64,000 nucleotides of DNA from IMG/VR virus record IMGVR_UViG_3300032236_000747, positions 290,681 to 354,680 of that record. The stretch is one strand, 5' to 3'. The position numbers and the translations under genes are program-made. The notes beneath the pieces were generated by a model. The model was not told the DNA's origin. It saw nothing but the letters and a program-made list of their open reading frames with translations, and ran no database searches. Of this stretch, positions 3,682 to 55,199 are shown piece by piece (positions within the stretch are counted from its first letter, which is position 1; every line of letters begins with the position of its first letter).

Positions 3682-3704
3682 CACAAAAACAGGTAAATAC
3701 GCAT

Positions 3705-4886
3705 ATGACACATCCAATACCATTTCCAACAAGCCCTCAAACAGGGCAACAATTTCTAGCAGATAATACAGTGACTTATATCTGGACTGGAGATCGTTGG
3801 TCTTCTAGTCGTGCTCTAGTTAATAGATATACAACATTTACTGTAGAAGAAGGCGCATTTGCAGATTTTGACTACAATCCATCAATTAATAAGTTATTAG
3901 ATAGTGGTGATAGTACTACAGAATCATACCGTTTTATAGATGCAGGCAGTTCTAATGTTGGACTTGAGCAAATAACTGTCACATCATCTTATCTAGCACC
4001 TAGCGGATACGCACCTGGTGATTTTGGCACAGTTACTTACTATATTGTACACGACGGCGCACAAGAAGCTGGTCTAGTTTTCCACGGACTAACCGGCGGT
4101 GGAGACCAAACAATAACAGGCACCTACGCTCAGGGCAGTAATACTTTAGTAATACCTCCATTATATCAGAGTTTATGGTCACAAATAGTATCTGTTAGAG
4201 CTTATGTGGTAGACAGTCTCGGTGATACATATTTTGCTGATGTTAGCGATATGTGGGAAACACCTTATGGTCCGTGTCTAGTAGCAGGCACATTAATGAC
4301 ATTGGCTGATGGAACACATAAGAAGATTGAAGACATTACATATGATGATGTATTGAGTGTATGGAACTTTGATCTAGGTGAAATGTCAGAAGCCCGTCCA
4401 CTATGGGTCAAACGCAAACAAACCGCCGGAGACTATACACTGGTAAAGTTCAGCGATGGTACAGAATTACGCACTGTTGGACACCATATATTCAACAAAC
4501 AAGTAGGCGAGTTTACAAAGATTATCACTGATGATACTCCGGTAGGTACTATCACCGTAAACGAACAAGGACAAGAGATTGCTATTGTTAGCAAAGAACT
4601 AGTGCGAGAAACTGTAGACTACTATAACATCTGGACACAGTATCATTTGAACGCTTATGCTAATGGTCTATTAACTGGCAACAAATATTGTAATATCTAC
4701 CCTGTTGTGGATATGAAGTATGTGAAAGATGACAGAACTTTACGCTCTGTAGAAGAATTTGCGGATATCGATGAGAAATATATCGCAGGTATGAGATTAC
4801 AAGAACAAACATTCGATTTAGCATTTATACAAACTATGGTAGATAGAATAGAATTATTAGACAGCAAGGCTGCTATAACAGCATAA
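3705..4886 (+). CDS. Virion-associated protein with Hint (intein/hedgehog-like) autoprocessing domain
   Basis: P/CLVAGTLMTLADG block A (Cys codon 4275), TVGH block B, YYNI...ANGLLTGN end (Asn codon 4680). Confidence 0.8.
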   Translation: MTHPIPFPTSPQTGQQFLADNTVTYIWTGDRWSSSRALVNRYTTFTVEEGAFADFDYNPSINKLLDSGDSTTESYRFIDAGSSNVGLEQITVTSSYLAPSGYAPGDFGTVTYYIVHDGAQEAGLVFHGLTGGGDQTITGTYAQGSNTLVIPPLYQSLWSQIVSVRAYVVDSLGDTYFADVSDMWETPYGPCLVAGTLMTLADGTHKKIEDITYDDVLSVWNFDLGEMSEARPLWVKRKQTAGDYTLVKFSDGTELRTVGHHIFNKQVGEFTKIITDDTPVGTITVNEQGQEIAIVSKELVRETVDYYNIWTQYHLNAYANGLLTGNKYCNIYPVVDMKYVKDDRTLRSVEEFADIDEKYIAGMRLQEQTFDLAFIQTMVDRIELLDSKAAITA

Positions 4887-4899
4887 TAGGAAAACAACT

Positions 4900-6522: not shown

Positions 6523-6542
6523 TACACAAAGGATAACATAAA

Positions 6543-6794
6543 ATGGCACAATATAACATTACAGCAACATCAGCTAGTAGAGACATGACAGTGAGTAACA
6601 CCACTATTGACATCTTGGTAGAAAATGAAGAAGGTGGTCGTCCAACAGCGGGCACAAGAATACAATTTCCAAGTCCTGCTGAGTTTGATACACTGGAACT
6701 AGCACAGAAATATGCCAACAGCTATGCTGGACATCTAAATGATCATTATCACGAAGGTGGCGATGATTGGGTTGGACAGGCTACAGCAGTTTAA
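6543..6794 (+). CDS. Hypothetical protein
   Basis: 83 aa ORF with AAGGA RBS. Confidence 0.6.
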   Translation: MAQYNITATSASRDMTVSNTTIDILVENEEGGRPTAGTRIQFPSPAEFDTLELAQKYANSYAGHLNDHYHEGGDDWVGQATAV

Positions 6795-7388: not shown

Positions 7389-7825
7389 ATATAAAATGTG
7401 TAAACGTTGTTAACGGGATGCTCTTCTGGCTGTGGATCTAGTTCATAGACACGTGGAAAATACACAGCGTATTTTGTGGGCCAGTTGGGATTTAAAAACG
7501 TGCGTGATATAAATCGATCACAATGATCTAGAACAATGGGCAACAAGCGTTCTGTAAAATCTTTACCCAAGGCTAGTCCGCCGTCGATTATTATAGTGTC
7601 CCAATGTTCGTTCAAACTAAACCAATCTTTGACCCTTATTTTAGGATCATTGTAAACTGGCTCTAGGTCCCATGCTTCTGTACATAAAGGTAATAGTAGC
7701 TTAGTGCTACCCAGCAATAAAACTTTACCTCTACAATATCTTTCAAATACAGCATAATCATCTTGATTAGGAGCAGCGGGCCACTCTAATGTTGTCCAGA
7801 ATTCGGGGTCGTTGATCATGCTCAT
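7364..7825 (-). CDS. Hypothetical protein, possible truncated class I SAM-methyltransferase fold
   Basis: KVLLLGST and DTIIIDGGL segments; preceded by TAAATA-N5-ATG. Confidence 0.4.
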   Translation of the reverse strand: MSMINDPEFWTTLEWPAAPNQDDYAVFERYCRGKVLLLGSTKLLLPLCTEAWDLEPVYNDPKIRVKDWFSLNEHWDTIIIDGGLALGKDFTERLLPIVLDHCDRFISRTFLNPNWPTKYAVYFPRVYELDPQPEEHPVNNVYTFYIWNKKQSL

Positions 7826-7913
7826 GTGGATATTTAAGCGGTAAATAACGGTAGAACATACAATAATGGCTGAGATTACCTAACTAGGTAAATATAGCAA
7901 ACGGAGACAACAA

Positions 7914-8240
7914 ATGTCAGTAAACTTTAGAAAAGGTGCTTATTACCCAGGCACAACCCAGAATCAAACAACAACTAGCACTAATGCTGTGACCAATGCT
8001 TTTAGTTCAACTACGAGCATTATTCGTGTCGCAGTACAAAATGATACATATGTTCAGCCTGTTAACAACTCTAGCACAACGGCCACTGTTAGCAGTATGA
8101 TCATCCCAGGTGGTGGCGTAGAGTTCTTCGCAGTTCGCCCGAATACATATCTAGCACACCTATTAGTGAGTTCGGCGGGTTGGATAAGTGTTACTGAACT
8201 TTCTAATCTAAACAATATTGTAAACGGAACAACTTACTAA
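7914..8240 (+). CDS. Hypothetical small virion protein
   Basis: 108 aa beta-rich ORF, TAAATA at 7889 and GGAG RBS. Confidence 0.6.
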   Translation: MSVNFRKGAYYPGTTQNQTTTSTNAVTNAFSSTTSIIRVAVQNDTYVQPVNNSSTTATVSSMIIPGGGVEFFAVRPNTYLAHLLVSSAGWISVTELSNLNNIVNGTTY

Positions 8241-9289: not shown

Positions 9290-9300
9290 TAAATACTATC

Positions 9301-9576
9301 ATGAGAGCAAAAGAATTTACAATTAACATTCCTATCAACATTAAGATCAATGGTGATGGCGAGCCTGAAATCAGCACAAGTCAAGATACCGAAGCTGATG
9401 TAGATTCTAACCCTGTATTTGTTCCGCCTCTACAGCAACATTTAGAGCTACACAAAGCAGAACTAGGTAAAGAAAGCCCTGTCATTGACAAACTTACACA
9501 AGATAATGATATTGGCACAGAACCGGACGGAACCGAAGCACAGCTAGCTAGACTCAAGCAACTGATGGCCCGATAA
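9301..9576 (+). CDS. Hypothetical protein, putative internal head protein
   Basis: MRAKEF N-terminus; TAAATA-N5-ATG. Confidence 0.55.
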   Translation: MRAKEFTINIPINIKINGDGEPEISTSQDTEADVDSNPVFVPPLQQHLELHKAELGKESPVIDKLTQDNDIGTEPDGTEAQLARLKQLMAR

Positions 9577-9598
9577 ATACTCAAACTAGGGTATTTTA

Positions 9599-12500
9599 AT
9601 GGCCTTCATTCAGAAGTTATTCACAACACTACAAAACTACGATAATGGCGATACTCGTATTGGCGAGCTCAACCGTATTTGGTATGACTCTAATCGTAAT
9701 GCCTTCTACATATCTGACGGCCAAACAGAAGGCGGTATACTAATTGGTGGCGGTGGTGGTGGCGGAACTTACACACTATTAACAGCAACTACTACCCGCC
9801 TAGGTGGTGTTAGAATCGGTGCTGGTATTCAAGTTGATTATCGCGGTGTTATTAGTGTAAACACATCTACGCTAGCAGGACCACAAGGTCCTAAAGGCGA
9901 CACTGGTCCTAAAGGGGATACTGGAACACAAGGATCAGTTGGGGCTCAAGGCGATCCCGGTATAGGAGTTCCTGTCGGCGGCGTTGCTGGACAAGTGCTG
10001 GCTAAAATTGACGGTGTTGATTATAATACATATTGGGTTGATCAAACTGGTGGTACAGGTAATGGTAGCGTAATACAAAGTGATATAGCTCCTACTCCTG
10101 CAAATACTACGACTCTTTGGTATGATACAGTAGGCGGTCGTAGTTATGTGTATTATTACGGGGGTTGGGTTGACGCTAGCCCAGGAATAGGCGGGATACC
10201 TGGACCAAAAGGCGATACAGGTACGCAAGGACCTACTGGACTACAAGGAGACATAGGTCCAAAAGGTGATACAGGTACTCAGGGACTAATAGGTCCAATG
10301 GGTCCGAAAGGCGATACAGGTACTCGAGGCCTTACTGGTGATATAGGCCCAGTTGGACCAAAGGGAGATACCGGAACACAGGGATTGATAGGACCAACAG
10401 GACCTAAAGGGGACACTGGTACACAAGGTATTCAAGGACCGATTGGTCTAACTGGAAACACTGGAACACAGGGTATACAAGGAATTCCGGGCGAAGGCGT
10501 TCCGGTAGGCGGAACTGCCGGGCAAGTATTAACCAAGATTGACGGTGTTGATTACAATACACACTGGGTTGATGCTAATTTTTCTAGTTCAACTGCTACT
10601 GCTGGTGTAAGTGATATTACCGCAGGGACAGGAACTTATGTATCTGCTAATACAGGTTCAGTGAGCATCTGGGTTGATCCAAACGTAGTCGAAGGCACGG
10701 TAGCTCCTGCATCTACAGCTTCATTTTGGTATGATACTAATGTAGGTCGACTATTCATATATTATAATGGGTCTTGGATTGATGCTAGTCCGGGAACTAC
10801 TGGTATACCTGGTCCAAAGGGAGACACTGGAACTACTGGTCCAACTGGACTACAGGGAGATATTGGCCCTAAAGGTGATACCGGTACAGCAGCTACCCTA
10901 GTTATAGGAACAGTTACCTTAGGAACTTATACAAGTGTAATTAATGTAGGCGATCAATACAATGCTGTGTTTGACTTTGTATTACAGCAAGGACCTAAAG
11001 GTGATGCTGGGCTCAAAGGCGACACAGGAACCACAGGTGCAACTGGCGCACAAGGACCTAAAGGTGATACTGGCACCCAAGGAATACAAGGCATACAAGG
11101 TTTTCAGGGAATACAAGGCATTAAAGGTGATACTGGCACCACCGGAGCAACTGGTGCTACAGGCAGTGTTGGTCCAAAAGGTGATACCGGTACACAGGGT
11201 ATTCAAGGTATTCAGGGACCAAAAGGCGATACAGGAACTACCGGCGCACAAGGTATCCAAGGCATACAAGGTATCCAGGGCGTAACGGGTAGTACAGGTA
11301 CTCAAGGACCAAAAGGCGATACTGGCTCAATTGGCATAGCTACATTAAATTTAGGCACAGGTACATACGGCACACTAACATCGCAGACATTAAGTTTATG
11401 GATCGGCCAAGATGTTTCTGCTACAAGTAATGTAACATTTAACTCTGTGGCTATTAGTAATCTTGGTAGCATTTTATCATCTCAAGTAAACATTGATGCA
11501 TTTATTACAGTCTATACCTTAACTAATGTTGTTGACTATAGTTCTACTGCTACTTTGGCATCGGGTGTTTACGGTAACATCAATGGAGTTCAACCTCCGT
11601 GGACTGTATTTGATCTAAGTCCCGGACCTTCAGGTACTCCTGTAAGTACTATTGCTATTAACGATAAACTAACAGGTGCTGGTATTATTCCTAGTACCGT
11701 AGAAGATCGCGGCACCGGAACTTATGCATCTTATGTTATTGTTAATTTAGATCTAGCTGGCCTAGGACAGATACAACCTTTAGTTGGGGCGGCATTTAAC
11801 CTTGTACGCCCACTACAAAAAGCTGGCTTGGACATTACTACACAAAACAACACAGACATTTTCCTAAACAGCAATGGTCTAGGTGATGTACTAGTTAACA
11901 CCAACATTCTACCAGTTGCCACCAATGTAAGTAATTTAGGAAGTCCAGACTTTAGATGGAAGAGTTTGTATGTTGGCCCAGGTACTATCTATGTCTTAGA
12001 TGAAACATTAGGCAAAGATATTAGCATTGGCGCTCGTGACGGACTACTATATGTACAAAACGGTGCTGGGCTTGTAGTAGGTGAGTTTACTCTTATTGAC
12101 AATCAGATTAAGATTGCCAATCCCGATCGTGATATTATTATTGGAACTACTACTGCTACAGGTAGTGTAGTATTAAATCGTCCTATTAGAGTTAACACAC
12201 TAGCAGGACAAACTTCATTTAGTGTAGATAGACTAGGTCTAACTACAATCCACCCACTTATCTCAATGAGCTCTACTCAATCAGCATTGAATATTGTGGG
12301 CAACACTAGCGGACTACAGCAACCTCGTAATTTTAACGATACAATGTTGCAGATTACAGGTGCAGACAATACTGCTACTCGTGTAAGTTTAGATTCATTT
12401 GGTACAGGCACATATCCAGTTATTGCTGGTCGTCAAGCAGGCGGAACAGTAGCGTCTCCAAGTCAAACAAAATTAAACGATACGCTGTTAAGATTTAGTG

Positions 12501-17636: not shown

Positions 17637-18473
17637 ATGAAAACATTCAAAGACTATCTTAGGGAAGCACAACAGGCCGCAGCAGCGGAACCTGAAGATG
17701 ATGAACCTCCTAAGAAAAGAACACAAACACAAGATCGTCCTAATACCAGTGCCTATGATAGAGCATTCGGACAACAAGGACAAGATCACCCCCTAGCACA
17801 AAATCCTGATCACAATCGCAGAGAACGTGAACCAGAACAGCCAGATGATCCTAGAGGCCGTCAATCTAGCAGAGATAATACTCGCAATAGAACAAGCGGT
17901 CTAAGCACACCGGGTATGTCGGATTTACTTGCTAACCTAAGAGATATAGAGCCACATCCAGATGATGTTCCTAATCCAGACCAAGAACCTAGACAAGACA
18001 TAGAACTAAGAGTAGACACAGAAAACCTACCATCGGTGGCAGGACAGGCTCTACAAGCTTCGGGTATTGTCAATCCAGAATGGCACAAGGTAGCTAACCT
18101 ACCAGGCAACATGAAACGTGCTATACAATCACTAGGTCGACATTTGTTTAGTAGCATGACAAGTACTCCTACAGAAGAAATACAAATGATTGCTAATCTA
18201 GGAGGACAAGGTCCTAACACTACAAGAGAAGTTAACTCTGTGGCTAACTGGATTCGTGAACACGGTGATGATCAAGGACCAGGCAACATAGATTTCGCAA
18301 CTAGCATCCCAGGATACAACGCAGAGATACATAACTATGTAGCAGCAGGAATACATTGGTTGTTGGTTAGAGATGAGTTTGGACAATACATTTATAGTTG
18401 GCCAGAGCAAGATTCTCTAGAGCATCGATCAGCTGCAAGACTAGGCAACGATAGACCAAGATTAGGTAGGTAA
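17637..18473 (+). CDS. Putative internal head protein
   Basis: N-terminus MKTFKDYLREA resembles the T4 internal protein capsid-targeting sequence. Confidence 0.6.
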   Translation: MKTFKDYLREAQQAAAAEPEDDEPPKKRTQTQDRPNTSAYDRAFGQQGQDHPLAQNPDHNRREREPEQPDDPRGRQSSRDNTRNRTSGLSTPGMSDLLANLRDIEPHPDDVPNPDQEPRQDIELRVDTENLPSVAGQALQASGIVNPEWHKVANLPGNMKRAIQSLGRHLFSSMTSTPTEEIQMIANLGGQGPNTTREVNSVANWIREHGDDQGPGNIDFATSIPGYNAEIHNYVAAGIHWLLVRDEFGQYIYSWPEQDSLEHRSAARLGNDRPRLGR

Positions 18474-18480
18474 ATATAAA

Positions 18481-19422
18481 ATGAGACCAGAACGATTAAG
18501 ATTATTTGCTCAACTAGCAGAGCAGTTAATGGAAGCTAGTACCGCCGGCGATTTAGTTAAGCGCCATCCAGGTGGTAATGAGATCATGCAGAAGTTGCAT
18601 AGAGATCTAGGACTACCACACAACGTAACATGGTCCGAACTAGGCATGGGAGAACGTTTCCATTGGACTCCGTTTAAAGAAACCAAGTTCGGTAGCTGGG
18701 TTATTGTTAAAGGACCAAAAGGCACAGGAGCCATTCAAGCTCAGAAAGGCGGCGGCGCATATCTAGGCATGGCTAGCACAGGTGGCCCTATTGAAACAAT
18801 CAGAGATGACCGTGGTGGTAACATTGTAGACTTTCTAGTAAGACATCTAGGCAAGGATCTAAGAAGATATAGCGGAGACACAGTAGGACCAGCGTCGACA
18901 TATCAACGAACTGATAATCCAAGACAAATGACATATCCTGAAAAAACAAAATACAGGAAAGATCTTAAAACACTGGGCGGTTCAAAGAAAACCATGGATG
19001 CTGATGCCATACTAAAAAGATTTAAACCTCTATGGAAATCTGGTGTAGTAAAAGCTATGGCTGACATTCAAGGTTTTGTTTCTCAACAAATCAAAGCAGG
19101 TGCCTATGCCAAAGCTGAAAGTAAAATTCAAAGATTAAAAAAACTTCAATCAATAATGAATATTTTAGACAATGATGAAGAACTACCACCATCAAATGAT
19201 TACAGTGATAGTAATATTCTTTCATCTGCTGTTAAGAGTGCTATTACTCTCGGAGCAGCGCACTACTATCCAGAGTTAACAGGTAATGTAACTAAAAACG
19301 GTTACTCTTATCGTGCAGGTAATGCTGAAGGTACACAAAAGTTATTACAAGATATCGCAGGAGGTGATACAAGTAAAATGTTTACAGTAGCACATTTCTT
19401 TAGAAGGAGTTTAATATCATGA
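18481..19422 (+). CDS. Hypothetical late protein, putative internal head protein
   Basis: LAE/LME motifs near N-terminus; TAAATA-N4-ATG. Confidence 0.55.
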   Translation: MRPERLRLFAQLAEQLMEASTAGDLVKRHPGGNEIMQKLHRDLGLPHNVTWSELGMGERFHWTPFKETKFGSWVIVKGPKGTGAIQAQKGGGAYLGMASTGGPIETIRDDRGGNIVDFLVRHLGKDLRRYSGDTVGPASTYQRTDNPRQMTYPEKTKYRKDLKTLGGSKKTMDADAILKRFKPLWKSGVVKAMADIQGFVSQQIKAGAYAKAESKIQRLKKLQSIMNILDNDEELPPSNDYSDSNILSSAVKSAITLGAAHYYPELTGNVTKNGYSYRAGNAEGTQKLLQDIAGGDTSKMFTVAHFFRRSLIS

Positions 19423-20565: not shown

Positions 20566-20579
20566 CAATAAATACTATT

Positions 20580-21863
20580 ATGAAAATACATCATCTCTTA
20601 AATGAAACTGTAGAAACTTATACTACTGTAGATGAGTTCGTGGACATTATGAAGGATTTTTTACCTTTGGCCATGCATCATCTTAAGATAGATGCGCTAC
20701 CTCACATTAGGTTAGAAAAGTATATCAAAGACTCACATCAGCCTACGTTTGGCAAATACGTTAACGAAGAAAATGTGATACACGTAGGCATTGAAAATCG
20801 TCACCCATTAGATGTTCTAAGAACACTAGCACATGAACTAGTACACTTTAAACAAGGAACAGAGAATAGATTAGATGCCAAGAGCGGCGAAACTGGCAGT
20901 CCTATAGAGAATGAAGCACACGAGGTAGCTGGTATTATCATGCGTCATTTTGGTAAAAGATATCCTCATTATTTTACAGACACAGCTATTACTATTTCCG
21001 AAGATTGGAACAAAGTTAATCACCACGATAAAACTAACGGCCTAAGTCGTAAAGCAGTCAAAGCCTATCGTCGTGAACATCCAGGTAGTAAACTACAAAC
21101 AGCAGTTACTACTAAACCTAGTAAGTTAAAGGCGGGTAGTAAGGATGCTAAACGCCGTAAAAGTTTCTGTGCTCGTATGAGTGGCAACAAAGGCCCAATG
21201 AAAAAGCCTAATGGTAAACCTACTCCTAAAGCATTGGCCTTGCGCCGTTGGAACTGTGAGAGCATTGAAGAAATGCGTCAGCTGATCGAAACAGCTGAAC
21301 AGGTTATCATGCAGGAAAAATGGAGCAAGAAGTATAAGAGTAGTATCAACTGCTCACATCCTAAAGGCTTTAGTCAACGTGCCCATTGTGCCGGTAAGAA
21401 GAAGCACAATGAAAGTCATGACGTTATGGAACATGTATGCCCTGATTGCGGTATGTGCCAAACACATGGTACACTTAATGAGATTAAGAAAGGCGCCAAA
21501 GACTCAAACGGCTTTACCAAGTGCTGGCCAGGACATCATGCCGCTGGTACTAAGAAAGGTAAAAATGGTGGACAGGTTCGTAACTGTGTGCCTAACGAAA
21601 GTGTGGCGGAAGGTGGTGGAGCTCAACAAGCAGCCATAGCTATTGCTAAACGTGAAAGCGGCAAGTATACCAAAGACGGCAAGCGAATAAAAGAAAACTT
21701 TGCTGACGGAAAGCATCCCGAAGACAAAGGCGACAGCAAACGCTATGGGGTTCCTACTAAAGCAAGCGTGAGCACACTACGCAAGGTAGCACATCAAGGT
21801 GGTCGTAAAGGACAACTAGCTCATTGGATGGCTAATATGAAAGCAGGCAAAGCCAAAAAATAA
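20580..21863 (+). CDS. Modular late protein: HExxH metallopeptidase-like module plus basic/Cys-His modules separated by x-x-E sites
   Basis: TLAHELVHFKQ; KRRKSFCARM, CSHPKGFSQRAHC, CPDCGMC, KCWPG..NCVP modules; LNE, ISE, MQE, LNE, VAE, IKE linkers. Confidence 0.7.
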   Translation: MKIHHLLNETVETYTTVDEFVDIMKDFLPLAMHHLKIDALPHIRLEKYIKDSHQPTFGKYVNEENVIHVGIENRHPLDVLRTLAHELVHFKQGTENRLDAKSGETGSPIENEAHEVAGIIMRHFGKRYPHYFTDTAITISEDWNKVNHHDKTNGLSRKAVKAYRREHPGSKLQTAVTTKPSKLKAGSKDAKRRKSFCARMSGNKGPMKKPNGKPTPKALALRRWNCESIEEMRQLIETAEQVIMQEKWSKKYKSSINCSHPKGFSQRAHCAGKKKHNESHDVMEHVCPDCGMCQTHGTLNEIKKGAKDSNGFTKCWPGHHAAGTKKGKNGGQVRNCVPNESVAEGGGAQQAAIAIAKRESGKYTKDGKRIKENFADGKHPEDKGDSKRYGVPTKASVSTLRKVAHQGGRKGQLAHWMANMKAGKAKK

Positions 21864-25248: not shown

Positions 25249-25958
25249 GAGCCTACGAAATATTCCTAGAAGATGTAACTGATCAGATCCAACCTAATCA
25301 AGCTGTAGGTAGTGGACCTGGTAAGATTGCACAGACTCCAGGAAATAAAGCAGCAAAGCCTGCTATGCCTAGTGCTACAACAATAGCAAATGCTGCTCAA
25401 GGAGCAGGAACCACACCGGATGCTACACAACCGGTTGGACAAAAACAAATGATGGGACAAAATGTCCCTGGACAACAACAAACAGGATCTGCTACACAAG
25501 GAACTGTAGGTACTATGGGTACAGCAGGAAGACCAGGTACACCCGATCCCAAGAGTGGCATGACACAAACACCTGCTCAACAACAAAGTCAGTTACAAAA
25601 AGCGCAGAGTCAGCTACAGCAAAAACAACAACAAGATCAAATAGCTCAGAAAAAGACTGATCTAACCAAAGACCTTAATCAACTTAAAACTGTAGCACCT
25701 AGTATTAATGTTTCCAAGGATGCAGATGCTCTAACAAAACCAGCAGATGAAAGATCCCCACAGGACCTTAAAAACATGGCAGGTATCACGAATGATATTG
25801 CCAGCATCATTGGACAACAGAACGGAACACAACAACTAAAACAGTTGTTAATGAAAATGAAAACCCTCGATGCTCAAAAGCAACAAGCACAGCAAGCAGA
25901 TAATCAAGCAGAGTTAGATAGTCTATCTCAACAAAATACCCCAACTCAGGCTAGATAA
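25245..25958 (+). CDS. Gln-rich low-complexity putative internal head protein
   Basis: MRAYEIFLED N-terminus; Q/P/G-rich body. Confidence 0.55.
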   Translation: MRAYEIFLEDVTDQIQPNQAVGSGPGKIAQTPGNKAAKPAMPSATTIANAAQGAGTTPDATQPVGQKQMMGQNVPGQQQTGSATQGTVGTMGTAGRPGTPDPKSGMTQTPAQQQSQLQKAQSQLQQKQQQDQIAQKKTDLTKDLNQLKTVAPSINVSKDADALTKPADERSPQDLKNMAGITNDIASIIGQQNGTQQLKQLLMKMKTLDAQKQQAQQADNQAELDSLSQQNTPTQAR

Positions 25959-25966
25959 ATATCACT

Positions 25967-26182
25967 ATGCGAATACATCATATCATCGATGGAATATCTA
26001 TTATCATTACCAATGAAGAACGCCGATTCATTTCTAAAAATGATGATAAGACTGTGACCATCGAATCACTAGACGATCACGATCAGTGGGTCGCTCAGAA
26101 CCTAGTACGCAAGGGTGTTTACACACTAAGTAAAGATAAGAAACACATTACTAGGATTGACAATGCTAGAGAAAGTCTATAA
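25967..26182 (+). CDS. Hypothetical late protein
   Basis: TAAATA-N5-ATG. Confidence 0.6.
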   Translation: MRIHHIIDGISIIITNEERRFISKNDDKTVTIESLDDHDQWVAQNLVRKGVYTLSKDKKHITRIDNARESL

Positions 26183-28052: not shown

Positions 28053-28435
28053 GATTATTTGAAGTAGAAGGCAACATTGTCAATGATCTTGTTGTCTTGT
28101 TAAGAAACCAGGTAGGCAGGACAGATAGCGTAAGTCATAACAAAGCTCCACAGACTTTAACGTATCCTGCTTTAGCCAGCCTTATGAACAATTTAGGTTA
28201 CCCTGGTATTACCAAAGATAGTTTAAAACAACTATACGATGGTAGTGATGAGCTTAAGAAGTTAATCAGAGATCCAAAACCAGCAGGTGAAGATCCTAAT
28301 GCCAACGCAGCCGACGTTGTCACATTAAAAACATCCGAAGAACGTACCAAAGATGAACCAGCTACAGCAGCCGGGGGCAAGAGTATAGACTCTATGGCTA
28401 AATCTGGTGCTAACTATAAACCCGAACTAAGTTGA
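28049..28435 (+). CDS. Hypothetical putative internal head protein
   Basis: MRLFEV N-terminus; ATGA overlap. Confidence 0.55.
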   Translation: MRLFEVEGNIVNDLVVLLRNQVGRTDSVSHNKAPQTLTYPALASLMNNLGYPGITKDSLKQLYDGSDELKKLIRDPKPAGEDPNANAADVVTLKTSEERTKDEPATAAGGKSIDSMAKSGANYKPELS

Positions 28436-28460
28436 CATTAACTTAGAGAAGTAGTATACT
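28432..28460 (+). promoter_or_regulatory. Sigma70-like promoter, probably leaderless
   Basis: TTGACA-N17-TATACT, ATG 5 nt downstream, no SD. Confidence 0.75.
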
Positions 28461-28465
28461 CAAGT

Positions 28466-29188
28466 ATGATATACACTCCTCCGCCTTTTATTGAGCGGTT
28501 CCAATACAAAAACTGTAAACAAATAAACGATCCTGTTACACGCAAGCGTGTATACCTAACACCAGACGGCGAAAGTCTTCCAAGCGTTACAACTATCCTT
28601 AGTGCTACTAAAGATATGACCCATTTAAATGAATGGAAAAAGCGTGTTGGTGTAGAAAACGCACAACGTATAACCACCGAAGCTGCTGGAGTAGGCACAG
28701 CAATGCACGCCAATCTAGAACGTTTTATCATTGGTGAACAACGTCAACCCGGCAACAATGTAGTGCATGTACAAGCCAACAAAATGGCTGATGTTATTAT
28801 CGAAAATGGACTAAGCAAGGTAAACGAAGTATGGGCCATGGAACAGAGCTTGTACTTTCCGGGCTTGTTTTCAGGCACCACTGACCTAGTAGGTGTATAC
28901 GAAGATGAACCAGCAGTAATGGACTACAAACAAACTAATAAGCCTAAGAAAGCAGAGTGGGTAGACGACTACTATATGCAGCTAATGGCCTATATATTAG
29001 CACATAACGAAGTATACGGCACCGACATTCGCAAAGGTGTTATCTTTATGTGTAGTAGAGACTTCCAATACCAGCAGTTTACTCTAGAGCCCAAAGACTT
29101 TAACAAGTGGCAAGATGCTTGGTTAAACAAAGTAGAAGAGTATTACACAACAGGTATGAAAGGCCTCAAGCAACTACTCACGCAGTAA
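28466..29188 (+). CDS. PD-(D/E)XK exonuclease (Cas4/MGME1-like phage family)
   Basis: LPSVTTIL, GTAMH, EQSL...GTTDL...DYKQ motifs. Confidence 0.85.
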   Translation: MIYTPPPFIERFQYKNCKQINDPVTRKRVYLTPDGESLPSVTTILSATKDMTHLNEWKKRVGVENAQRITTEAAGVGTAMHANLERFIIGEQRQPGNNVVHVQANKMADVIIENGLSKVNEVWAMEQSLYFPGLFSGTTDLVGVYEDEPAVMDYKQTNKPKKAEWVDDYYMQLMAYILAHNEVYGTDIRKGVIFMCSRDFQYQQFTLEPKDFNKWQDAWLNKVEEYYTTGMKGLKQLLTQ

Positions 29189-29215
29189 GATAAATATCTA
29201 ACTAGGGGATATTAT

Positions 29216-30964
29216 ATGGCTGTTATAGAGATTGCTAAGATACAAGTACGCAGAGGAAATGAAGGTGATGTTGGAATGCCTCAACTCGACAGCGGTGAGT
29301 TCGGTTGGGCTATAGACACACAAACACTTTACATCGGTAATGGTAGTGTAGCAGAAGGAGCGCCAGCAGTTGGCAATACAGAGGTTATTACAGCTAATAA
29401 CATATCAAACTTCTTTAACTTAAATGCTGTTTATACATACGGATCTAGCTACGGAAATCCGTATTCTATTGTAGATTCAAACATAAGAAAAGCTGTTACT
29501 AGATCTGTTTCGTCAAAGTTAGATGACTTTGTTAATGTTGTAGACTTTGGCGCAGTAGCAGACTGGAACGGAGTTAGTGGTACTGATAATACACAAGCGT
29601 TTCAAACAGCGATAGATAACCTATATCTAACAAACACATCTACAAATGGTCAGCTATTAAGAATACCAGCAGGTACTTATTATATTGCCGGAACTATATA
29701 CGTACCACCTAACGCTACTATAACAGGTGACGGACCCGACAAGACTGTACTAGTAGGTGTTTCTGGAAGTAACCCATTGATTCAACTATGCGACGGTAGC
29801 AGCCCAGGCAACGGATCATATATTATATTTGTACCAGGGCAGGTTAATATAACAGGACCCGGAAAACCAACTAACATATATATAGAAGGAATGACCTTCA
29901 CCTATACTACAGATCCTAGTTCTTTCAGTCCATTAACATCTTATTCTCCTTTGTTAAGCCTGGACTGTGTTACAACTTGCCGAGTCGTCAACTGTAAGTT
30001 TTTAGGATTATATACAGCACAAACTATATACACTAGCGATACTAACGACCAATATAATGGATACACCGGTATAGACATCAGGAGTCAAGGTACTTCTATT
30101 AGTGTACTAACTTCGGATAATATATTGATTAAAGATTGTGTGTTTATTGGATTAAAATACGGTATCACTTCAAACTATAACTGTTCTGATATACTGATTG
30201 TTAATAACCTATTTGAAATATTGAATAGGGGAGTTAACTGGGCAACCAACCTTGCTAACTACAACACAGAAGGTCCTATTAGATCAAGAATCAATAGTAA
30301 TATTTTTGACTACATTTATAACGAAGGTATCTACGCAGGATCTAGTATTAATCAAACACAGCACATATCTAGTTTTAACTCGTTTTTTACAGTAGGAACA
30401 CACTTAGATAGCGCACCATTTGACGATACAAATGCCATTACACCTAGTATTAGATTTAACAGCGCAGGTAACGTATCTGTTGAAGATAAGTTTTATAGAG
30501 ACGAAAAGGTAGCAAGACTAACAACGGCCCCTACAAAATATGTACCTAGTATACTAGGTAAGGTATCTGTGTCATCTAATGTAGCATACACCAAGACTTG
30601 GGATATAACCGGCATTCCAACTTTGCCAACGGCACTAGTCTATATTCCATATGCTGGCAATGATCAAACAATCAACATACCTTATCTATATACTACATCC
30701 GGTGTTGGGGCTACTCCTAATGTGTATGTGACTAGAAAAGGAGTACTGTCAATATCTGTTTCTACTATAGCAGGAGCAGGACCACAACCAGTAACTGATA
30801 CATTTACATACACCTATACAGGTGGTGGTGGCACTGACCCGGAACCATTAAACGGTTTAACATTTACAGCAACGTTGGATACCACAGGCAACTTTATCAA
30901 AGTAGCCTACACAGGTAACTACAACGCAGGCACAATAGAATATCAATACAACTATCTAGGTTAA
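29216..30964 (+). CDS. Tail/baseplate protein with pectate-lyase-like beta-helix (putative depolymerase)
   Basis: IQVRRG..GEFGWAIDTQTLYIGNG N-terminus; VNVVDFGA..DNTQAFQTAID..IPAGTY motif. Confidence 0.75.
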   Translation: MAVIEIAKIQVRRGNEGDVGMPQLDSGEFGWAIDTQTLYIGNGSVAEGAPAVGNTEVITANNISNFFNLNAVYTYGSSYGNPYSIVDSNIRKAVTRSVSSKLDDFVNVVDFGAVADWNGVSGTDNTQAFQTAIDNLYLTNTSTNGQLLRIPAGTYYIAGTIYVPPNATITGDGPDKTVLVGVSGSNPLIQLCDGSSPGNGSYIIFVPGQVNITGPGKPTNIYIEGMTFTYTTDPSSFSPLTSYSPLLSLDCVTTCRVVNCKFLGLYTAQTIYTSDTNDQYNGYTGIDIRSQGTSISVLTSDNILIKDCVFIGLKYGITSNYNCSDILIVNNLFEILNRGVNWATNLANYNTEGPIRSRINSNIFDYIYNEGIYAGSSINQTQHISSFNSFFTVGTHLDSAPFDDTNAITPSIRFNSAGNVSVEDKFYRDEKVARLTTAPTKYVPSILGKVSVSSNVAYTKTWDITGIPTLPTALVYIPYAGNDQTINIPYLYTTSGVGATPNVYVTRKGVLSISVSTIAGAGPQPVTDTFTYTYTGGGGTDPEPLNGLTFTATLDTTGNFIKVAYTGNYNAGTIEYQYNYLG

Positions 30965-38030: not shown

Positions 38031-38049
38031 CCGCTTCGGCGGGTTTCTT
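38026..38049. terminator. Bidirectional Rho-independent terminator
   Basis: AACCCGC-TTCG-GCGGGTT between convergent transcripts. Confidence 0.85.
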
Positions 38050-38728
38050 ATGTTTTCTTAGAAGCCCATTGTTTAACTGCTGGATAGTATGTTGTAAACA
38101 GTTGATGACGTTTTTTGATTTCAGCAGCAGGCGCAGCTTTTCCATTAATGGCTCTTGTAACTGAAGCAGTATCAGCAAAGTCCTTTATACGTCTTTTAAC
38201 ATTTTGATCCCAAAACCATTTAGCAATCTTTGCCGCTTCGTGGGGATCTGCTGCCTTACTAGGATGTTCAACATAATATGATTCATCGCCATGCACGCCT
38301 GCGCCAGCAGCAATATAGTTACCCTTGCCTGTTAACTGAATGAATCCACGTCCGGCATATTCCAAAGCATCATTTGCGCCTTGGTTACCTGTGCTACGTG
38401 CATATTTGTGAGCTGCTTTATTAGGCCGACCTATCTCGCCGAGGTGTTTAAAGTTACCTGTTTCTGCGCTACACTGTGCTAGAAACTGTGCTAGTTCTGT
38501 TGGCTCGGTCATACCGCTGTTAATAGCATGTGAAGACAGTATTTTACGTGCTACATCGGCATCAACTTTTGGTGCTTGAACTAGTGGTTGCACTTTTGTA
38601 CTACGTGGATCTATTTTTTGGGGATGTTGAACAGGCTTGGCTTGTGCTATACCTGCTGCCATTGCGGCTGCTCCACCAAGGAATCCCCTGCGTGTTAAAT
38701 CTTCTCTAGTAATTTCGTATATTCGCAT
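38048..38728 (-). CDS. Glycoside hydrolase family 19 (endolysin/chitinase-like) with twin-arginine-like N-terminus
   Basis: FLAQCSAETG and YAGRGFIQLTGKGNY motifs; TRRGFLGG; TAAATA-N4-ATG. Confidence 0.88.
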   Translation of the reverse strand: MRIYEITREDLTRRGFLGGAAAMAAGIAQAKPVQHPQKIDPRSTKVQPLVQAPKVDADVARKILSSHAINSGMTEPTELAQFLAQCSAETGNFKHLGEIGRPNKAAHKYARSTGNQGANDALEYAGRGFIQLTGKGNYIAAGAGVHGDESYYVEHPSKAADPHEAAKIAKWFWDQNVKRRIKDFADTASVTRAINGKAAPAAEIKKRHQLFTTYYPAVKQWASKKT

Positions 38729-38757
38729 CAAGTATTTAGTTATGGATAAAAGATGAC

Positions 38758-38786
38758 TTTACAACCGACGATTTCTTGTGTATAAT
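38758..38786 (+). promoter_or_regulatory. Sigma70-like early promoter (leaderless ORF 38793)
   Basis: TTTACA-N17-TATAAT, ATG 6 nt downstream. Confidence 0.7.
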
Positions 38787-38792
38787 ATTACT

Positions 38793-38912
38793 ATGATAGC
38801 TTATTGGATAGTCGCAGGATTTTTTACCGCATTCGGGTGGCATTATGGTGAAAAGTTTATTGTGACATATGTTGACAAACCCGAAACTAAAATAGAACAA
38901 CTGGAAAAGTAA
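38793..38912 (+). CDS. Small membrane protein (39 aa)
   Basis: MIAYWIVAGFFTAFGWHYGEKF... Confidence 0.55.
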   Translation: MIAYWIVAGFFTAFGWHYGEKFIVTYVDKPETKIEQLEK

Positions 38913-41462: not shown

Positions 41463-41491
41463 TTGACTATTTGATAAAACCACTGTATAAT
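41463..41491 (+). promoter_or_regulatory. Early promoter with TAAAACCA(C/G)TG spacer motif
   Basis: TTGACT-N17-TATAAT; ATG at 41498 (leaderless). Confidence 0.8.
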
Positions 41492-41497
41492 AATAAC

Positions 41498-41905
41498 ATG
41501 GAATACAAAGTTCAATGCCGTAGCACTAAGACAAAGCGTTATGTGGAATCACTAATGCCTAGTTTAATCAAACAGCTGAAACTTGAAAATAGTCGCAGAT
41601 TTGTGTTGATCGACATATCTAAAAATGCTCCTAATCCACTAGCACTCGGTAGCACCACTACGTTGCCTGGATTAGATAGCTATGTTATAGCATTGCGTCC
41701 TCAAAAGTTATTAGAACTAGGCTCTACCCTAGCACATGAAATGATTCATGTTAAACAGTTTGCCAAGGGACAGTTTCAGATTGTAGACGGCAAGTATTTC
41801 TGGATGGGCAAGCGTGTTACAAAACGTACAAAATACTTAGACCAACCCTGGGAAGTAGATGCTTACAGTAAACAAGAAATCGTTTTTCGAAAGGCCTTAG
41901 AATGA
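41498..41905 (+). CDS. HExxH zinc metallopeptidase-like protein
   Basis: TLAHEMIHVKQF ... PWEVDAY. Confidence 0.8.
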   Translation: MEYKVQCRSTKTKRYVESLMPSLIKQLKLENSRRFVLIDISKNAPNPLALGSTTTLPGLDSYVIALRPQKLLELGSTLAHEMIHVKQFAKGQFQIVDGKYFWMGKRVTKRTKYLDQPWEVDAYSKQEIVFRKALE

Positions 41906-47461: not shown

Positions 47462-47462
47462 T

Positions 47463-47943: not shown

Positions 47944-48129
47944 TTTATTTTAGTTGCGTATTTGATATCAGGCGTACCTAGTACAGGAATGTCTATTAAC
48001 TGGGAAGTCAAGGGTGATTATGACACAAGGGCTGAATGTATCTACGCAAGATCACAGTTGATTAAATCTGTTCAAACAGGACCTAAGAAAAAATACGAAT
48101 GCCACGCCATGGAGGTAAGTGTAGAATGA
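47938..48129 (+). CDS. Small hypothetical protein with two Cys
   Basis: 63 aa; hydrophobic N-terminus. Confidence 0.6.
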   Translation: MKFILVAYLISGVPSTGMSINWEVKGDYDTRAECIYARSQLIKSVQTGPKKKYECHAMEVSVE

Positions 48130-48605: not shown

Positions 48606-48659
48606 CACAATAATGATGTTGTGTTATGCTGATAACAAGTCCACTAGATAGACTGGTGG
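48602..48659 (+). promoter_or_regulatory. Sigma70 promoter plus GAUAGAC-loop leader hairpin
   Basis: TTGACA-N17-TATGCT with TG extension; ACACAA-N8-TTGTGT palindrome; CCACTAG-ATAGA-CTGGTGG. Confidence 0.75.
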
Positions 48660-48683
48660 CATTTTAAATAAAGGAACTTTATT

Positions 48684-53095: not shown

Positions 53096-53116
53096 AATAC
53101 AAAGGAGAGATAGTTT

Positions 53117-53449: not shown

Positions 53450-53841
53450 GTATGCATCTACATCACCCATCCTTGTCTTATAATGGTAAGAAAAAAGGCA
53501 AGCAAAAGTTCCGCAATGCTGACGAGGCCGCAAGATCACGCGAGCTCGATGCTAGCTGGAAAGAAATGCAAAAGAAATGGGGAGTTGAAGCAGAAGAAAA
53601 GAAACGTAGTCGAGCAATGAATGCTGAACCGTTGACCTATAAGTTATCTGTTCCAGCTGGTCGTGCAACTAACTCTGCTATCCCTAGTAGAGACACAGGG
53701 CACCTTGGCACAGTTCGTTCTAAGGACATTCCTAAATACACCGGTACCAAAGTTATCGGTATCGGTACTATGCATAAATCAAACGCAGTACCTATCTTCA
53801 GCGATGAGGAAGCTATAGATATCAGTAAGATGCGACGATAA
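53446..53841 (+). CDS. Conserved T4-like phage hypothetical protein
   Basis: YTGTKVIGIGTMHKSNAVPIF motif. Confidence 0.7.
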   Translation: MSMHLHHPSLSYNGKKKGKQKFRNADEAARSRELDASWKEMQKKWGVEAEEKKRSRAMNAEPLTYKLSVPAGRATNSAIPSRDTGHLGTVRSKDIPKYTGTKVIGIGTMHKSNAVPIFSDEEAIDISKMRR

Positions 53842-53849
53842 ATATCCCT

Positions 53850-55199
53850 ATGAAACCATCATTCAACGACAAACTAATAGCATATCTAGTATTATTCAGT
53901 GGACTGGCGATTTCCGGTGTAGCAGAATATTACTCCATTATGGGCCTAATGGCCATCTACCCTGCTGCACTTATTCCTATTGTTATCATGGGTGTAGTGC
54001 TAGGCATTGGGAAGATTAGCGGAACTGTTTGGCTCAAACAAAACTGGGAATGGTCACCGTTCTTTCTTAAAGCATATGTGTTACCTGCTATTGTTGTCTT
54101 GATGTTGATTACAAGTTTAGGTGTATTTGGTTTCCTAAGTAAAGCACACAGTGATCAAAGTTTAGTTAGCGGTGATGTACTAAGTAAGATTGCGGTATAC
54201 GACGAAAAGATTAAGGTAGCAAAGGAAAATATCGATGCTAATCGCAAAGCTCTCAAACAGATGGATGAGTCTGTGGACCAAGTTATGGGTCGAAGTCAAG
54301 ACGAAAAAGGTGCGGACAAAGCGGTTGCGCTACGTAAAGGGCAGGCCAAAGAACGCACTCGATTACTTTCTGAGATTACAGCCGAACAGAAAGCTATTGC
54401 CCAGCTTAGTGAAGAACGGGCACCCATTGCCGCAGAAGTGCGTAAGGTGGAAGCAGAAGTTGGTCCGATAAAATACATTGCACACTTACTCTATGGAGAA
54501 AATCCAGATGCTAATATTCTTGAAAAAGCGGTTATTTGGGTCACTGTTCTTATTGTTATCGTTCTCGATCCTTTGGCTGTTGTCTTATTGTTAGCAAGTC
54601 AATACAGTTTCCAACGCTTCCGTGAATACGAAGAAAGTAGCTGGTTAGATGATCAAGCAGACGAGTTAACAGAAGCTTTTTATGTGGCAGATGTAGGAGA
54701 AAAACCTACAGCAGAAGAAAAAGTTCCTGAAGAGGAAGATCTCCTAGTTGAAAACGAACCAGAAAAGGCTTATCTAAAACAACCATTTGTGCATTTTAGA
54801 AATCTAACTCCTATGCCAGCGCCTTCAAATGATATTACATCTGGGTTTGGTAGGTCAGAGATTGTAGAGATTCCAGACATGGAACGTCCTGGCGATTACC
54901 TAACACCGCCCGACGATACTCCGAACTTTGAAGGTGTTAAGATAGACGGTGAGTGGGTACAAACAGGCCCAGCGATTGAGCCGGACCCATTTGAGGGCAA
55001 AGAATATGTAATGATGGATGGACAGCAAATGCATGTCAGTGCCGCTAGAACAGTACTTGCTCATAAAAATCGTGAAAACAGCGGATACGTTCAAAATGAA
55101 GAACAGGGCGAAGGCACTAAGTGGAACCGTGTTATCAGTGAAGCAGAATACAGAGACAAAATAAATGACAATAAAGATAACCCTAGTAACACCGCCTGA
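53850..55199 (+). CDS. Membrane protein with coiled-coil and acidic tail
   Basis: Three N-terminal TM helices, central coiled coil, further TM; TAAATA-N5-ATG. Confidence 0.75.
   Translation: MKPSFNDKLIAYLVLFSGLAISGVAEYYSIMGLMAIYPAALIPIVIMGVVLGIGKISGTVWLKQNWEWSPFFLKAYVLPAIVVLMLITSLGVFGFLSKAHSDQSLVSGDVLSKIAVYDEKIKVAKENIDANRKALKQMDESVDQVMGRSQDEKGADKAVALRKGQAKERTRLLSEITAEQKAIAQLSEERAPIAAEVRKVEAEVGPIKYIAHLLYGENPDANILEKAVIWVTVLIVIVLDPLAVVLLLASQYSFQRFREYEESSWLDDQADELTEAFYVADVGEKPTAEEKVPEEEDLLVENEPEKAYLKQPFVHFRNLTPMPAPSNDITSGFGRSEIVEIPDMERPGDYLTPPDDTPNFEGVKIDGEWVQTGPAIEPDPFEGKEYVMMDGQQMHVSAARTVLAHKNRENSGYVQNEEQGEGTKWNRVISEAEYRDKINDNKDNPSNTA

What the first reader, a model, noticed from the sequence alone, without database searches (positions are those of the whole stretch)
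3694..53852. Fixed TAAATA-N5-ATG spacing implies systematic leaderless late mRNAs
Seen: TAAATA followed by exactly 5 nt and then ATG, without an SD, at genes starting 3705, 7825(-), 9301, 20580, 25967 and 53850, and by 4 nt at 18481 and 38728(-). Known: T4 gp55 late promoters (TATAAATA) start about 6 nt after the motif. Inference: +1 coincides with the A of AUG, so a class of late genes (mostly putative internal head proteins) is leaderless. Sigma70 promoters at 28432, 38758 and 41463 show the same geometry. This could decouple these genes from SD-dependent initiation, which is interesting next to a phage-encoded S21.
Basis: partly seen in the sequence, partly recalled or inferred. Interest (0 to 1): 0.6.

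Follow-up and report, generated by a model that had tools for sequence, protein, structure and literature searches.

The report
Phage late promoters abutting start codons
In this uncultured 355-kb jumbo phage and its environmental relatives, the T4-type late-promoter box TAAATA sits 4-5 bases before the ATG of about 28 late genes (terminase, tail tube, endolysin and others). Their mRNAs therefore most likely start at the AUG with no leader and no ribosome-binding site; this is unusual for a T4-like late system, has a precedent in another phage, and is not yet backed by RNA data.

Summary
All eight listed sites exist. Across the whole 354,680-bp phage genome, the TAAATA-to-ATG distance has a sharp peak at N5 (25 sites, 21 opening ORFs of at least 60 aa) and N4 (10 sites, 8 with ORFs), against about 1.6-3.6 per bin.

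The phage encodes a gp55-like late sigma factor. TAAATA is depleted 3-4 fold inside genes on both strands and concentrated in intergenic DNA. It also occurs 17-25 nt upstream of SD-bearing genes, and in three cases directly behind intrinsic terminators.

The base before the ATG is a pyrimidine at 22 of 22 N5 sites, the usual start-site signature. Sigma70-like promoters show the matching peak at N6, their own canonical +1. The geometry is conserved gene by gene in dozens of uncultured relatives while the spacer letters vary. It is absent from T4, PA5oct, GAP32 and Phosso.

The genes are late functions (TerL, tail tube, baseplate, endolysin), not "mostly internal head proteins". The S21 link is not supported: S21 also occurs in PA5oct and Phosso, which lack the pattern.

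No RNA run was found, so the start sites are inferred. Phage phiYS40 is a precedent for leaderless late mRNAs, so this is a new variant of a known kind.

The parts
3694..3707 (+). GTAAATA-N5-ATG; start of a 393-aa ORF (3705-4886), function unknown
   Evidence: First start after an in-frame stop 30 nt upstream. The orthologue in relative L108 has TAAATA-N6-ATG.
7823..7836 (-). TTAAATA-N5-ATG; start of a 153-aa ORF (7364-7825, minus strand)
   Evidence: The orthologue in L108 is 68% identical from residue 1 and has the same TAAATA-N5-ATG.
9290..9303 (+). ATAAATA-N5-ATG; start of a 91-aa ORF (9301-9576) beginning MRAKEF
18471..18483 (+). GTAAATA-N4-ATG; start of a 313-aa ORF (18481-19422). The TAA of the motif is also the stop of the upstream ORF.
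20569..20582 (+). ATAAATA-N5-ATG; start of a 427-aa ORF (20580-21863), PHROG families of unknown function
25956..25969 (+). ATAAATA-N5-ATG; start of a 71-aa ORF (25967-26182), virion structural protein family phrog_16215. The TAA doubles as the upstream stop.
38726..38738 (-). CTAAATA-N4-ATG; start of the 226-aa endolysin-like ORF (38048-38728, minus strand)
   Evidence: (phrog_181 E 4e-29)
53839..53852 (+). ATAAATA-N5-ATG; start of a 449-aa ORF (53850-55199), function unknown
28432..28468 (+). sigma70-like TTGACA-17-TATACT-N5-ATG; 240-aa ORF 28466-29188 (candidate leaderless early/middle mRNA)
38758..38795 (+). sigma70-like TTTACA-17-TATAAT-N6-ATG; 39-aa hydrophobic ORF 38793-38912, divergent from the endolysin-like gene
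41463..41500 (+). sigma70-like TTGACT-17-TATAAT-N6-ATG, directly behind a terminator-like hairpin; 135-aa ORF from ATG 41498
7889..7916 (+). GTAAATA-N19-ATG with a GGAG leader (gene 7914-8240): an example of the leadered class of the same promoter
   Evidence: Conserved in L108 (N22) and in a pond strain.
9574..9601 (+). ATAAATA-N19-ATG before the 2308-aa ORF (9599-16525): leadered class
29191..29218 (+). ATAAATA-N19-ATG with a GGGG/AGG leader before the 582-aa tail-fibre-like ORF (29216-30964): leadered class
56769..57002 (+). phage-encoded ribosomal protein S21 (the frame opens at TTG 56757; first ATG at 56769)

Best explanation
(R)TAAATA is the -10-like box of this phage's late promoters. 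It is read by host RNA polymerase carrying the phage's gp55-like sigma factor, with no -35 element. Transcription starts at the 5th or 6th base after the box. In about 28 late genes the box lies 4 or 5 bases before the ATG, so the mRNA begins with AUG and has no leader and no Shine-Dalgarno sequence. In about 30 other genes the same box lies 17-25 bases upstream, leaving just enough room for an SD. A smaller set (about 8-12) of sigma70-type promoters is fused to start codons in the same way, at their own canonical spacing (N6). Translation of these mRNAs would then start by direct binding of ribosomes to the 5'-terminal AUG. Shown here: the motif, its geometry, its statistics, its conservation, the gp55 homologue and the gene functions. 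Inferred: that gp55-RNAP uses this box, the exact +1, and leaderless translation.
For: (1) Sharp genome-wide N5/N4 peak; the ATG is the first possible start. (2) A gp55-like sigma is encoded at genome 128223-129131 (phrog_12791 E 2.6e-85, phrog_234 E 6.6e-27, 33% identity to T4 gp55 residues 23-115). It is itself expressed from a TTGACA-17-TATACT promoter with an SD leader. (3) The T4 late box TATAAATA spans -13 to -6 (PMC1524935), so TAAATA-N5 puts +1 on the A. (4) It is a DNA-level signal. Inside genes TAAATA is depleted on both strands (60 sense against 164+-11 expected; 45 antisense against 171+-12; codon-shuffle control). It is the 14th most under-represented of 4096 hexamers, and 109 of its 223 copies lie in or at the edge of the 11% of the genome that is intergenic. 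(5) Leaderless and leadered sites share a purine before the box (27/30 and 24/31), whereas in-gene copies have a pyrimidine there (85/111). (6) Three sites (tail tube, TerL, genome 145188) lie 8-10 nt behind a hairpin plus T-run, leaving no room for a -35 element or a leader. (7) Start-site signature: the base before the ATG is T/C in 22/22 own N5 sites (P 6e-8), and T74 C14 A3 G0 in 91 distinct N5 sites of this phage plus relatives. N7 sites carry A/G at the 5th base after the box, preceded by Y. (8) Sigma70-like promoters show their own ATG peak at N6, the canonical +1 (12 against about 3 per bin, P 9e-5). (9) Gene-by-gene conservation in uncultured relatives with varying spacers: tail tube 22/24 N5; TerL 41/62 N5 plus 7 N4; a virion protein 63/65 within N4-7; operon-internal genes never carry the box. 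(10) The genes have late functions. (11) The first 36 nt of these ORFs fold more weakly than those of SD-led ORFs (P 0.0015). (12) 20 of 28 have no SD-preceded in-frame start within the first 50 codons; the peptide deformylase and phrog_17776 proteins align to their families from residue 1-2.
Against: There is no transcript evidence. The only runs that hold this phage are DNA metagenomes kept as contigs. T4-type co-factors were not detected: gp45 clamp (PF09116, phrog_223) and gp33 (phrog_254) gave no match, so the activation mechanism may differ from T4's. In the leadered class the enriched A lies at the 5th, not the 6th, base after the box, so at N5 sites the start could be the preceding pyrimidine, giving a 1-nt leader. 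Spacing drifts between N4 and N7 among orthologues, so some mRNAs would carry 1-3 nt. The host is unknown, so its ability to translate leaderless mRNAs is unknown. Counts from relatives are not phylogenetically independent.
Confidence: 0.72

Rival explanations
1. TAAATA is a late promoter, but the adjacent gene is not translated from that transcript. It would be made mainly from longer read-through or polycistronic mRNAs by translational coupling or SD-independent initiation. The box would lie against the ATG only because the genome is compact, and would serve the downstream genes.
For: In 7 of 33 sites the TAA of the box is the in-frame stop of a long upstream ORF, so coupling is conceivable there. 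Genes are tightly packed (88.6% coding). Terminators are rarely fully efficient.
Against: Most sites (about 23 of 30) do not overlap an upstream stop. TerL, tail tube and genome 145188 lie directly behind terminators. Compaction does not predict an exact N5 or N4 spacing, a pyrimidine at -1 in 22/22 sites, or the parallel N6 peak for sigma70 promoters. Compaction also does not explain why T4 and PA5oct, equally compact, lack the peak.
Confidence: 0.12
2. TAAATA acts in the RNA as a translation-initiation signal that replaces the SD at an SD-like spacing. It might be read by phage-modified ribosomes (S21, IF1), rather than acting as a promoter.
For: A spacing of 4-5 nt from the start codon is within the SD range. 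The phage encodes S21 and IF1.
Against: The motif is avoided on the antisense strand of genes at least as strongly as on the sense strand, which an RNA signal does not predict. The same box with the same upstream purine lies 17-25 nt ahead of genes that have their own SD. It matches the known gp55 box, and a gp55 homologue is present. Sigma70 -10 boxes show the same fusion at their own +1 spacing. S21 is also present in PA5oct and Phosso, which lack the pattern.
Confidence: 0.05
3. The pattern is an artefact: chance in AT-rich DNA, duplicated paralogues carrying the same 5' end, or wrongly chosen start codons.
For: Four of the ORFs begin with similar residues (M-R-x-x-E-F). My gene caller is home-made.
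Against: Poisson P is about 6e-17. BLASTP finds no similarity among the 28 proteins at E < 1e-3. The histogram needs no gene calls. Orthologues in relatives keep the arrangement while the spacer and early codons change. The more AT-rich T4 and PA5oct show no peak.
Confidence: 0.02

Closest known systems
T4-type late promoters (gp55 sigma, with gp33 and gp45)
   Same: An A/T box without a -35 element. TAAATA is the last six bases of T4's TATAAATA (-13 to -6; PMC1524935). It stands before structural, packaging and lysis genes, followed by an AT-rich stretch (PMC2988020). A gp55 homologue is encoded.
   Different: In T4 the box lies 13-34 nt (mode 28) before the ATG and there is no N4/N5 peak, so T4 late mRNAs have SD-bearing leaders. 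Here about half of the boxes abut the ATG. The first two T4 positions are reduced to a single purine. gp33 and gp45 homologues were not detected.
Thermus thermophilus phage phiYS40 middle/late transcripts
   Same: A large lytic phage whose middle and late mRNAs are mostly leaderless, giving a temporal class independent of the SD (summarised in PMC3594737; primary paper Sevostyanova et al. 2007, not held).
   Different: phiYS40 infects a host phylum in which -10 boxes next to ORFs and leaderless mRNAs are the norm (PMC12340547). From memory, it is not reported to use a gp55-type sigma. Here the promoter type is T4-like, SDs are used by about half of the genes, and the host is unknown.
Pseudomonas phage PA5oct (Arenbergviridae), the closest cultured relative
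   Same: TerL is 56% identical. It is a jumbo myovirus that depends on host RNAP (PMC7318152). It encodes S21. TAAATA boxes lie about 21-24 nt before SD-led structural genes.
   Different: There is no N4/N5 peak (3 and 0 ORF-linked sites), and TerL and its neighbours have SDs. The published promoter set consists of TATAATA/TTGAC motifs, and the word 'leaderless' does not occur in the paper.
Lambda cI mRNA from PRM, and leaderless mRNAs in general
   Same: Transcription would start at the A of the AUG, so translation would begin by recognition of a 5'-terminal AUG. All sites use ATG. The 5' ends are weakly structured.
   Different: Lambda has a single regulatory gene of this kind. Here it is a whole temporal class including essential virion and packaging genes.

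Membership tests
T4-type (gp55-dependent) late promoter | Phage encodes a gp55-family late sigma factor | tested here: met
   302-aa ORF at genome 128223-129131; phrog_12791 E 2.6e-85, phrog_234 E 6.6e-27; BLASTP against T4 gp55 33% identity, E 3e-10
T4-type (gp55-dependent) late promoter | TATAAATA-like box at about -10, with no conserved -35 element | tested here: met
   Core (R)TAAATA. No information upstream of -13 in the logos. Three sites lie 8-10 nt behind terminators. The full octamer TATAAATA is rare.
T4-type (gp55-dependent) late promoter | Located before late (virion, packaging, lysis) genes | tested here: met
   TerL, TerS-like, tail tube, adaptor, baseplate wedge, virion proteins and endolysin-like protein. 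Timing itself was not measured.
T4-type (gp55-dependent) late promoter | Co-activator gp33 and sliding clamp gp45 | tested here: not met
   No match to phrog_254, phrog_223 or PF09116 at E <= 1 in the complete genome. Divergent analogues cannot be excluded.
T4-type (gp55-dependent) late promoter | Transcription starts about 6 nt after the box, dependent on gp55 | not testable with these tools
   No RNA run. Indirect: a Y-R step at the 5th/6th base after the box.
Leaderless mRNA | Primary 5' end at (or within about 3 nt of) the start codon | not testable with these tools
   Only DNA contigs were available. Inferred from promoter geometry for two promoter classes.
Leaderless mRNA | No SD; the start codon is AUG | tested here: met
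   The spacer is 4-5 nt and G-poor. All 28 called genes start with ATG, against 9% GTG/TTG among SD-led genes, which is only weakly significant.
Leaderless mRNA | The annotated start codon is the true start | tested here: met
   It is the first start after a nearby in-frame stop. Family profiles align from residue 1-2 for PDF and phrog_17776. Orthologues align from residue 1. 20/28 have no SD-preceded alternative.
Leaderless mRNA | The host or phage can translate 5'-terminal AUGs efficiently | not tested
   The host is unknown. The phage encodes IF1 and S21 but no IF2 or IF3.

The most novel reading that the evidence does not exclude
This clade of uncultured jumbo phages runs a two-channel translation programme. 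Essential late genes (and some early ones) would be expressed as true leaderless mRNAs, while the phage alters the initiation machinery late in infection (through its own IF1 or S21, or an unidentified factor). Leaderless phage messages would then be favoured over SD-led host messages, making this a T4-like counterpart of the IF2/IF3 shift reported for phiYS40.
Probability: 0.15. Interest if true: 0.8.

Novelty: new variant of a known kind. Interest (0 to 1): 0.55.

Why it matters
T4-type late transcription is a textbook system, and its mRNAs are taken to carry SD-bearing leaders. Here a widespread environmental lineage with the same sigma family appears to have fused about half of its late promoters to start codons. 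Essential virion, packaging and lysis proteins would then depend on leaderless initiation.

If RNA data confirm this, four things follow:
- It gives a natural, phylogenetically graded series (N4 to N7, and switches to N17-23 plus SD in orthologues) for studying how promoter geometry and leaderless translation co-evolve.
- It offers a simple rule for calling start codons and late genes in such metagenomic phages.
- It hints at a host, or a phage-modified ribosome, that handles 5'-terminal AUGs well.
- It shows that promoter-to-ATG distance histograms can reveal expression strategy from sequence alone.

Tried and rejected
RNA evidence: the look-up of sequencing runs found only DNA metagenome runs (the probable source plus pond metagenomes), and read laying returned contigs only, so no 5' ends could be read.

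DNA similarity: megablast of window 3000-9600 against the phage collection gave nothing.

T4 co-factors: PF09116, phrog_223 (gp45) and phrog_254 (gp33) gave no match. IF3_C and IF-2 gave no match.

Host: a genome-contig scan with the ClpX-like protein gave about 50% identity to many phyla, so the host remains unknown.

S21 link: rejected as an explanation, because S21 is also present in PA5oct and Phosso, which lack the pattern. IF1 is present in this phage, in G001 and in Phosso, so it does not track the pattern either.

Stop-codon overlap or coupling as the cause: only about 7 of 33 sites overlap an upstream stop.

Paralogy: none found by BLASTP.

Cultured model: the refined pattern RTAAATA-N4-Y-ATG is absent or at control level in Phosso, GAP32 and Vibrio phage 2.275.O. 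Plain TAAATA-N5-ATG shows no excess in PA5oct or T4.

Literature: no paper in the held library combines TATAAATA-type late promoters with leaderless mRNAs. The phiYS40 primary paper is not held.

The big protein searches, structure prediction and complex prediction were not used, because the claim does not rest on them.
Full report
CONTEXT. The window is the last 64 kb of a single-contig, 354,680-bp IMG/VR virus record (CheckV 100% complete, GC 40.4%). Window coordinate = genome coordinate minus 290,680. By TerL the closest cultured relative is Pseudomonas jumbo phage PA5oct (56% identity), followed by Sinorhizobium phage Phosso and the Rak2/GAP32 group. The DNA is found in its probable source metagenome and, as a ~96% identical strain, in pond metagenomes. 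No RNA run holds it.

OBSERVATION.
- There is a sharp peak at N5 (25 sites, 21 opening ORFs of at least 60 aa) and N4 (10 sites, 8 with ORFs). Background is about 3.6 (all ATG) or 1.6 (ORF-linked) per bin. Poisson P is about 6e-17 for N5 and 2e-4 for N4.
- A second, broad hump lies at 17-25 nt.
- With a home-made gene caller (318 genes, 88.6% coding), 28 of the N4/N5 ATGs start called or conserved genes. In nearly all of them the ATG is the first start after an in-frame stop 6-75 nt upstream.
- TAAATA at offset -11 is the commonest hexamer at any fixed offset before starts, ahead of any SD hexamer.
- About half of the remaining genes carry AAGGA/AGGAG at -12 to -8, so SD-dependent initiation is the default here and the N4/N5 genes are a distinct class.

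IS TAAATA A PROMOTER? Several independent lines say yes.
1. The phage encodes a gp55-family late sigma: phrog_12791 E 2.6e-85, phrog_234 E 6.6e-27, and 33% identity to T4 gp55 residues 23-115. Its own gene has a TTGACA-17-TATACT promoter and an AAGGAG leader, as expected for a factor made before late genes.
2. TAAATA is the 3' six bases of the T4 late box TATAAATA, which spans -13 to -6 (PMC1524935).
3. The word is avoided inside genes on both strands. There are 60 sense copies against 164+-11 expected and 45 antisense copies against 171+-12, measured against synonymous-codon shuffles. It is the 14th most under-represented of 4096 hexamers, and 109 of its 223 copies lie in or at the edge of the 11% intergenic DNA. 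Avoidance on the antisense strand points to a DNA signal, not an RNA signal.
4. Sites next to the ATG and sites 13-35 nt upstream share a purine just before the box (27/30 and 24/31). The surviving in-gene copies mostly have a pyrimidine there (85/111).
5. At the tail tube gene, TerL and genome 145188, the box lies 8-10 nt behind a GC hairpin plus T-run. That leaves no room for a -35 element or a leader.
6. The genes have late functions: TerL, a TerS-like protein, tail tube, head-tail adaptor, baseplate wedge, several virion proteins and an endolysin-like protein, plus peptide deformylase, an HNH endonuclease and unknowns.

WHERE IS +1? There are no RNA data, so this is inference.
- With the T4 numbering, TAAATA-N5 puts +1 on the A of ATG.
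- The base before the ATG is T or C in 22 of 22 N5 sites of this genome (P 6e-8). In 91 distinct N5 sites of this phage plus relatives it is T74 C14 A3 G0. N4 sites have T23 C2 of 32.
- N7 sites have A27 G2 at the 5th base after the box, preceded by a pyrimidine. Leadered sites have A at that 5th base in 23 of 31.
- A pyrimidine-purine step at the 5th/6th base after the box is the usual start-site signature. At N4 and N5 the purine is the A of AUG. N6/N7 variants in relatives would give 2-3 nt leaders.
- The spacer is AT-rich and almost free of G, like the melting segment of T4 late promoters (PMC2988020).
- As an internal control, sigma70-like promoters (TTGACA, at most 1 mismatch; N16-18; TATAAT, at most 1 mismatch) have their own ATG peak at N6, the canonical +1 for a -12 to -7 hexamer. 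The count is 12 against about 3 per bin (P 9e-5); 8 of them open ORFs of at least 30 aa. The window cases are 28466 (N5), 38793 and 41498 (N6).
- Two promoter classes each place the A of ATG at their own expected +1. That is hard to explain except by leaderless transcripts.

CONSERVATION.
- Upstream of TerL, most relatives keep hairpin, T-run, TAAATA, N5 and ATG, while the five spacer letters and the first codons vary.
- Taken gene by gene: tail tube 22/24 N5; TerL 41/62 N5 plus 7 N4; virion protein 229137 63/65 within N4-7. Operon-internal genes never have the box.
- One gene (genome 225328) switches among relatives between N5/N7 and N17-23 with an SD.
- Over 884 kb of relatives' loci the histogram again peaks at N5 (116), N4 (39) and N7 (36).
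- The window gene 7825(-) has a 68% identical orthologue with the same N5. Gene 3705 has N6 in that relative.
- Whole-genome histograms of ORF-linked sites give: own N5 21 / N4 8; relative G001 (322 kb) 12 / 5; PA5oct 3 / 0; T4 3 / 0. T4's TATAAATA lies 13-34 nt (mode 28) before the ATG.
- The refined pattern RTAAATA-N4-Y-ATG gives 10 against 0 (control) in G004 and 3 against 0 in G005. It gives 0 in Phosso, 2 against 1 in GAP32 and 0 in Vibrio phage 2.275.O.
- The fusion is therefore a trait of the uncultured clade and not of T4-like late systems in general. These counts are not phylogenetically independent.

OTHER SUPPORT.
- There is no BLASTP similarity among the 28 proteins.
- 20 of 28 have no SD-preceded in-frame start within 50 codons.
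- The PDF and phrog_17776 proteins align to their families from residue 1-2.
- All 28 use ATG (one search gives the comparison set).
- The first 36 nt fold more weakly than in SD-led genes (-0.99 against -2.08 kcal/mol, P 0.0015), and the +4 base is A or C in 25/28.

WHAT IS NOT SUPPORTED.
- "Mostly internal head proteins": the functions are diverse late functions. Only four ORFs share an M-R-x-x-E-F start.
- The S21 link: S21 is confirmed at window 56769-57002, but it is also encoded by PA5oct, Phosso, G001 and G004, so it does not track the pattern. In E. coli, ribosomes lacking uS2/bS21 translate the leaderless lambda cI mRNA better (PMC10491246).
- The phage also encodes IF1. IF1 is present in G001 and Phosso but not in PA5oct or GAP32. 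There is no IF2 or IF3.
- gp33 and gp45 homologues were not found.

COMPARISON WITH WHAT IS KNOWN. Leaderless middle/late mRNAs as a class are reported for Thermus phage phiYS40, together with an IF2/IF3 shift (PMC3594737). In Deinococcus-Thermus, -10 boxes next to ORFs are common (PMC12340547). Early phiKZ transcripts include no leaderless mRNA, and AR9 UTRs are 26-491 nt. The PA5oct paper reports TATAATA/TTGAC promoters and does not mention leaderless mRNAs. I found no paper linking gp55-type late promoters with leaderless mRNAs.

VERDICT. The core interpretation is well supported by sequence evidence but unproven by RNA. It is a new variant of known kinds (T4-type late promoter plus leaderless class expression). 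My confidence in leaderless or near-leaderless late mRNAs is about 0.7.

Noticed in passing
genome 281533-281724 (+), outside the window: Phage-encoded translation initiation factor IF1 homologue (PF01176, E 2.1e-25). Also found in relative G001 and Sinorhizobium phage Phosso, not in PA5oct or GAP32.
   Followed up: partly
window 38048-38728 (-) and 38793-38912 (+): The endolysin-like protein begins with a Tat-like signal (…TRRGFLGGAAAMAAG…). A divergent 39-aa hydrophobic ORF next to it starts 6 nt after a sigma70-like -10 box and may be a small membrane or lysis protein.
   Followed up: no
whole genome: Strong word avoidance resembling restriction-site avoidance. ACGCGT, GCGCGC, CGCGCG and ACGCGC are absent. 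AGCGCT and AAGCTT are very low. Hexamers containing AATT are about 4-fold depleted on both strands against codon shuffles.
   Followed up: no
genome 63745-64248 (+): Phage peptide deformylase (phrog_2890, E 4.8e-37, aligned from residue 1) is itself one of the TAAATA-N5-ATG genes.
   Followed up: partly
window 9301; genome 57916 (-), 265181, 258376: Four leaderless-class ORFs begin M-R-(A/Y)-x-E-F, with no further similarity by BLASTP. From memory, this resembles the short N-terminal capsid-targeting peptide of T4 internal proteins. Untested.
   Followed up: no
genome 128223-129131 (+): The gp55-like sigma is 302 aa against 185 aa in T4. The extra length is mainly an N-terminal extension of unknown role: its residues 155-245 align with T4 residues 23-115. 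Its gene has a consensus sigma70-type promoter and an SD.
   Followed up: partly
window 3652-7398: Pond-metagenome contigs (X2, X3) carry a strain about 96% identical over this stretch that becomes unlike it beyond, which suggests mosaic exchange among co-occurring relatives.
   Followed up: no
window 46442-50081: An NAD salvage pair: a NMN adenylyltransferase-like (CTP_transf_like) plus Nudix protein, and a NAMPT/NAPRTase-family protein. A ClpX-like ATPase lies at 55547-56788, next to S21.
   Followed up: no
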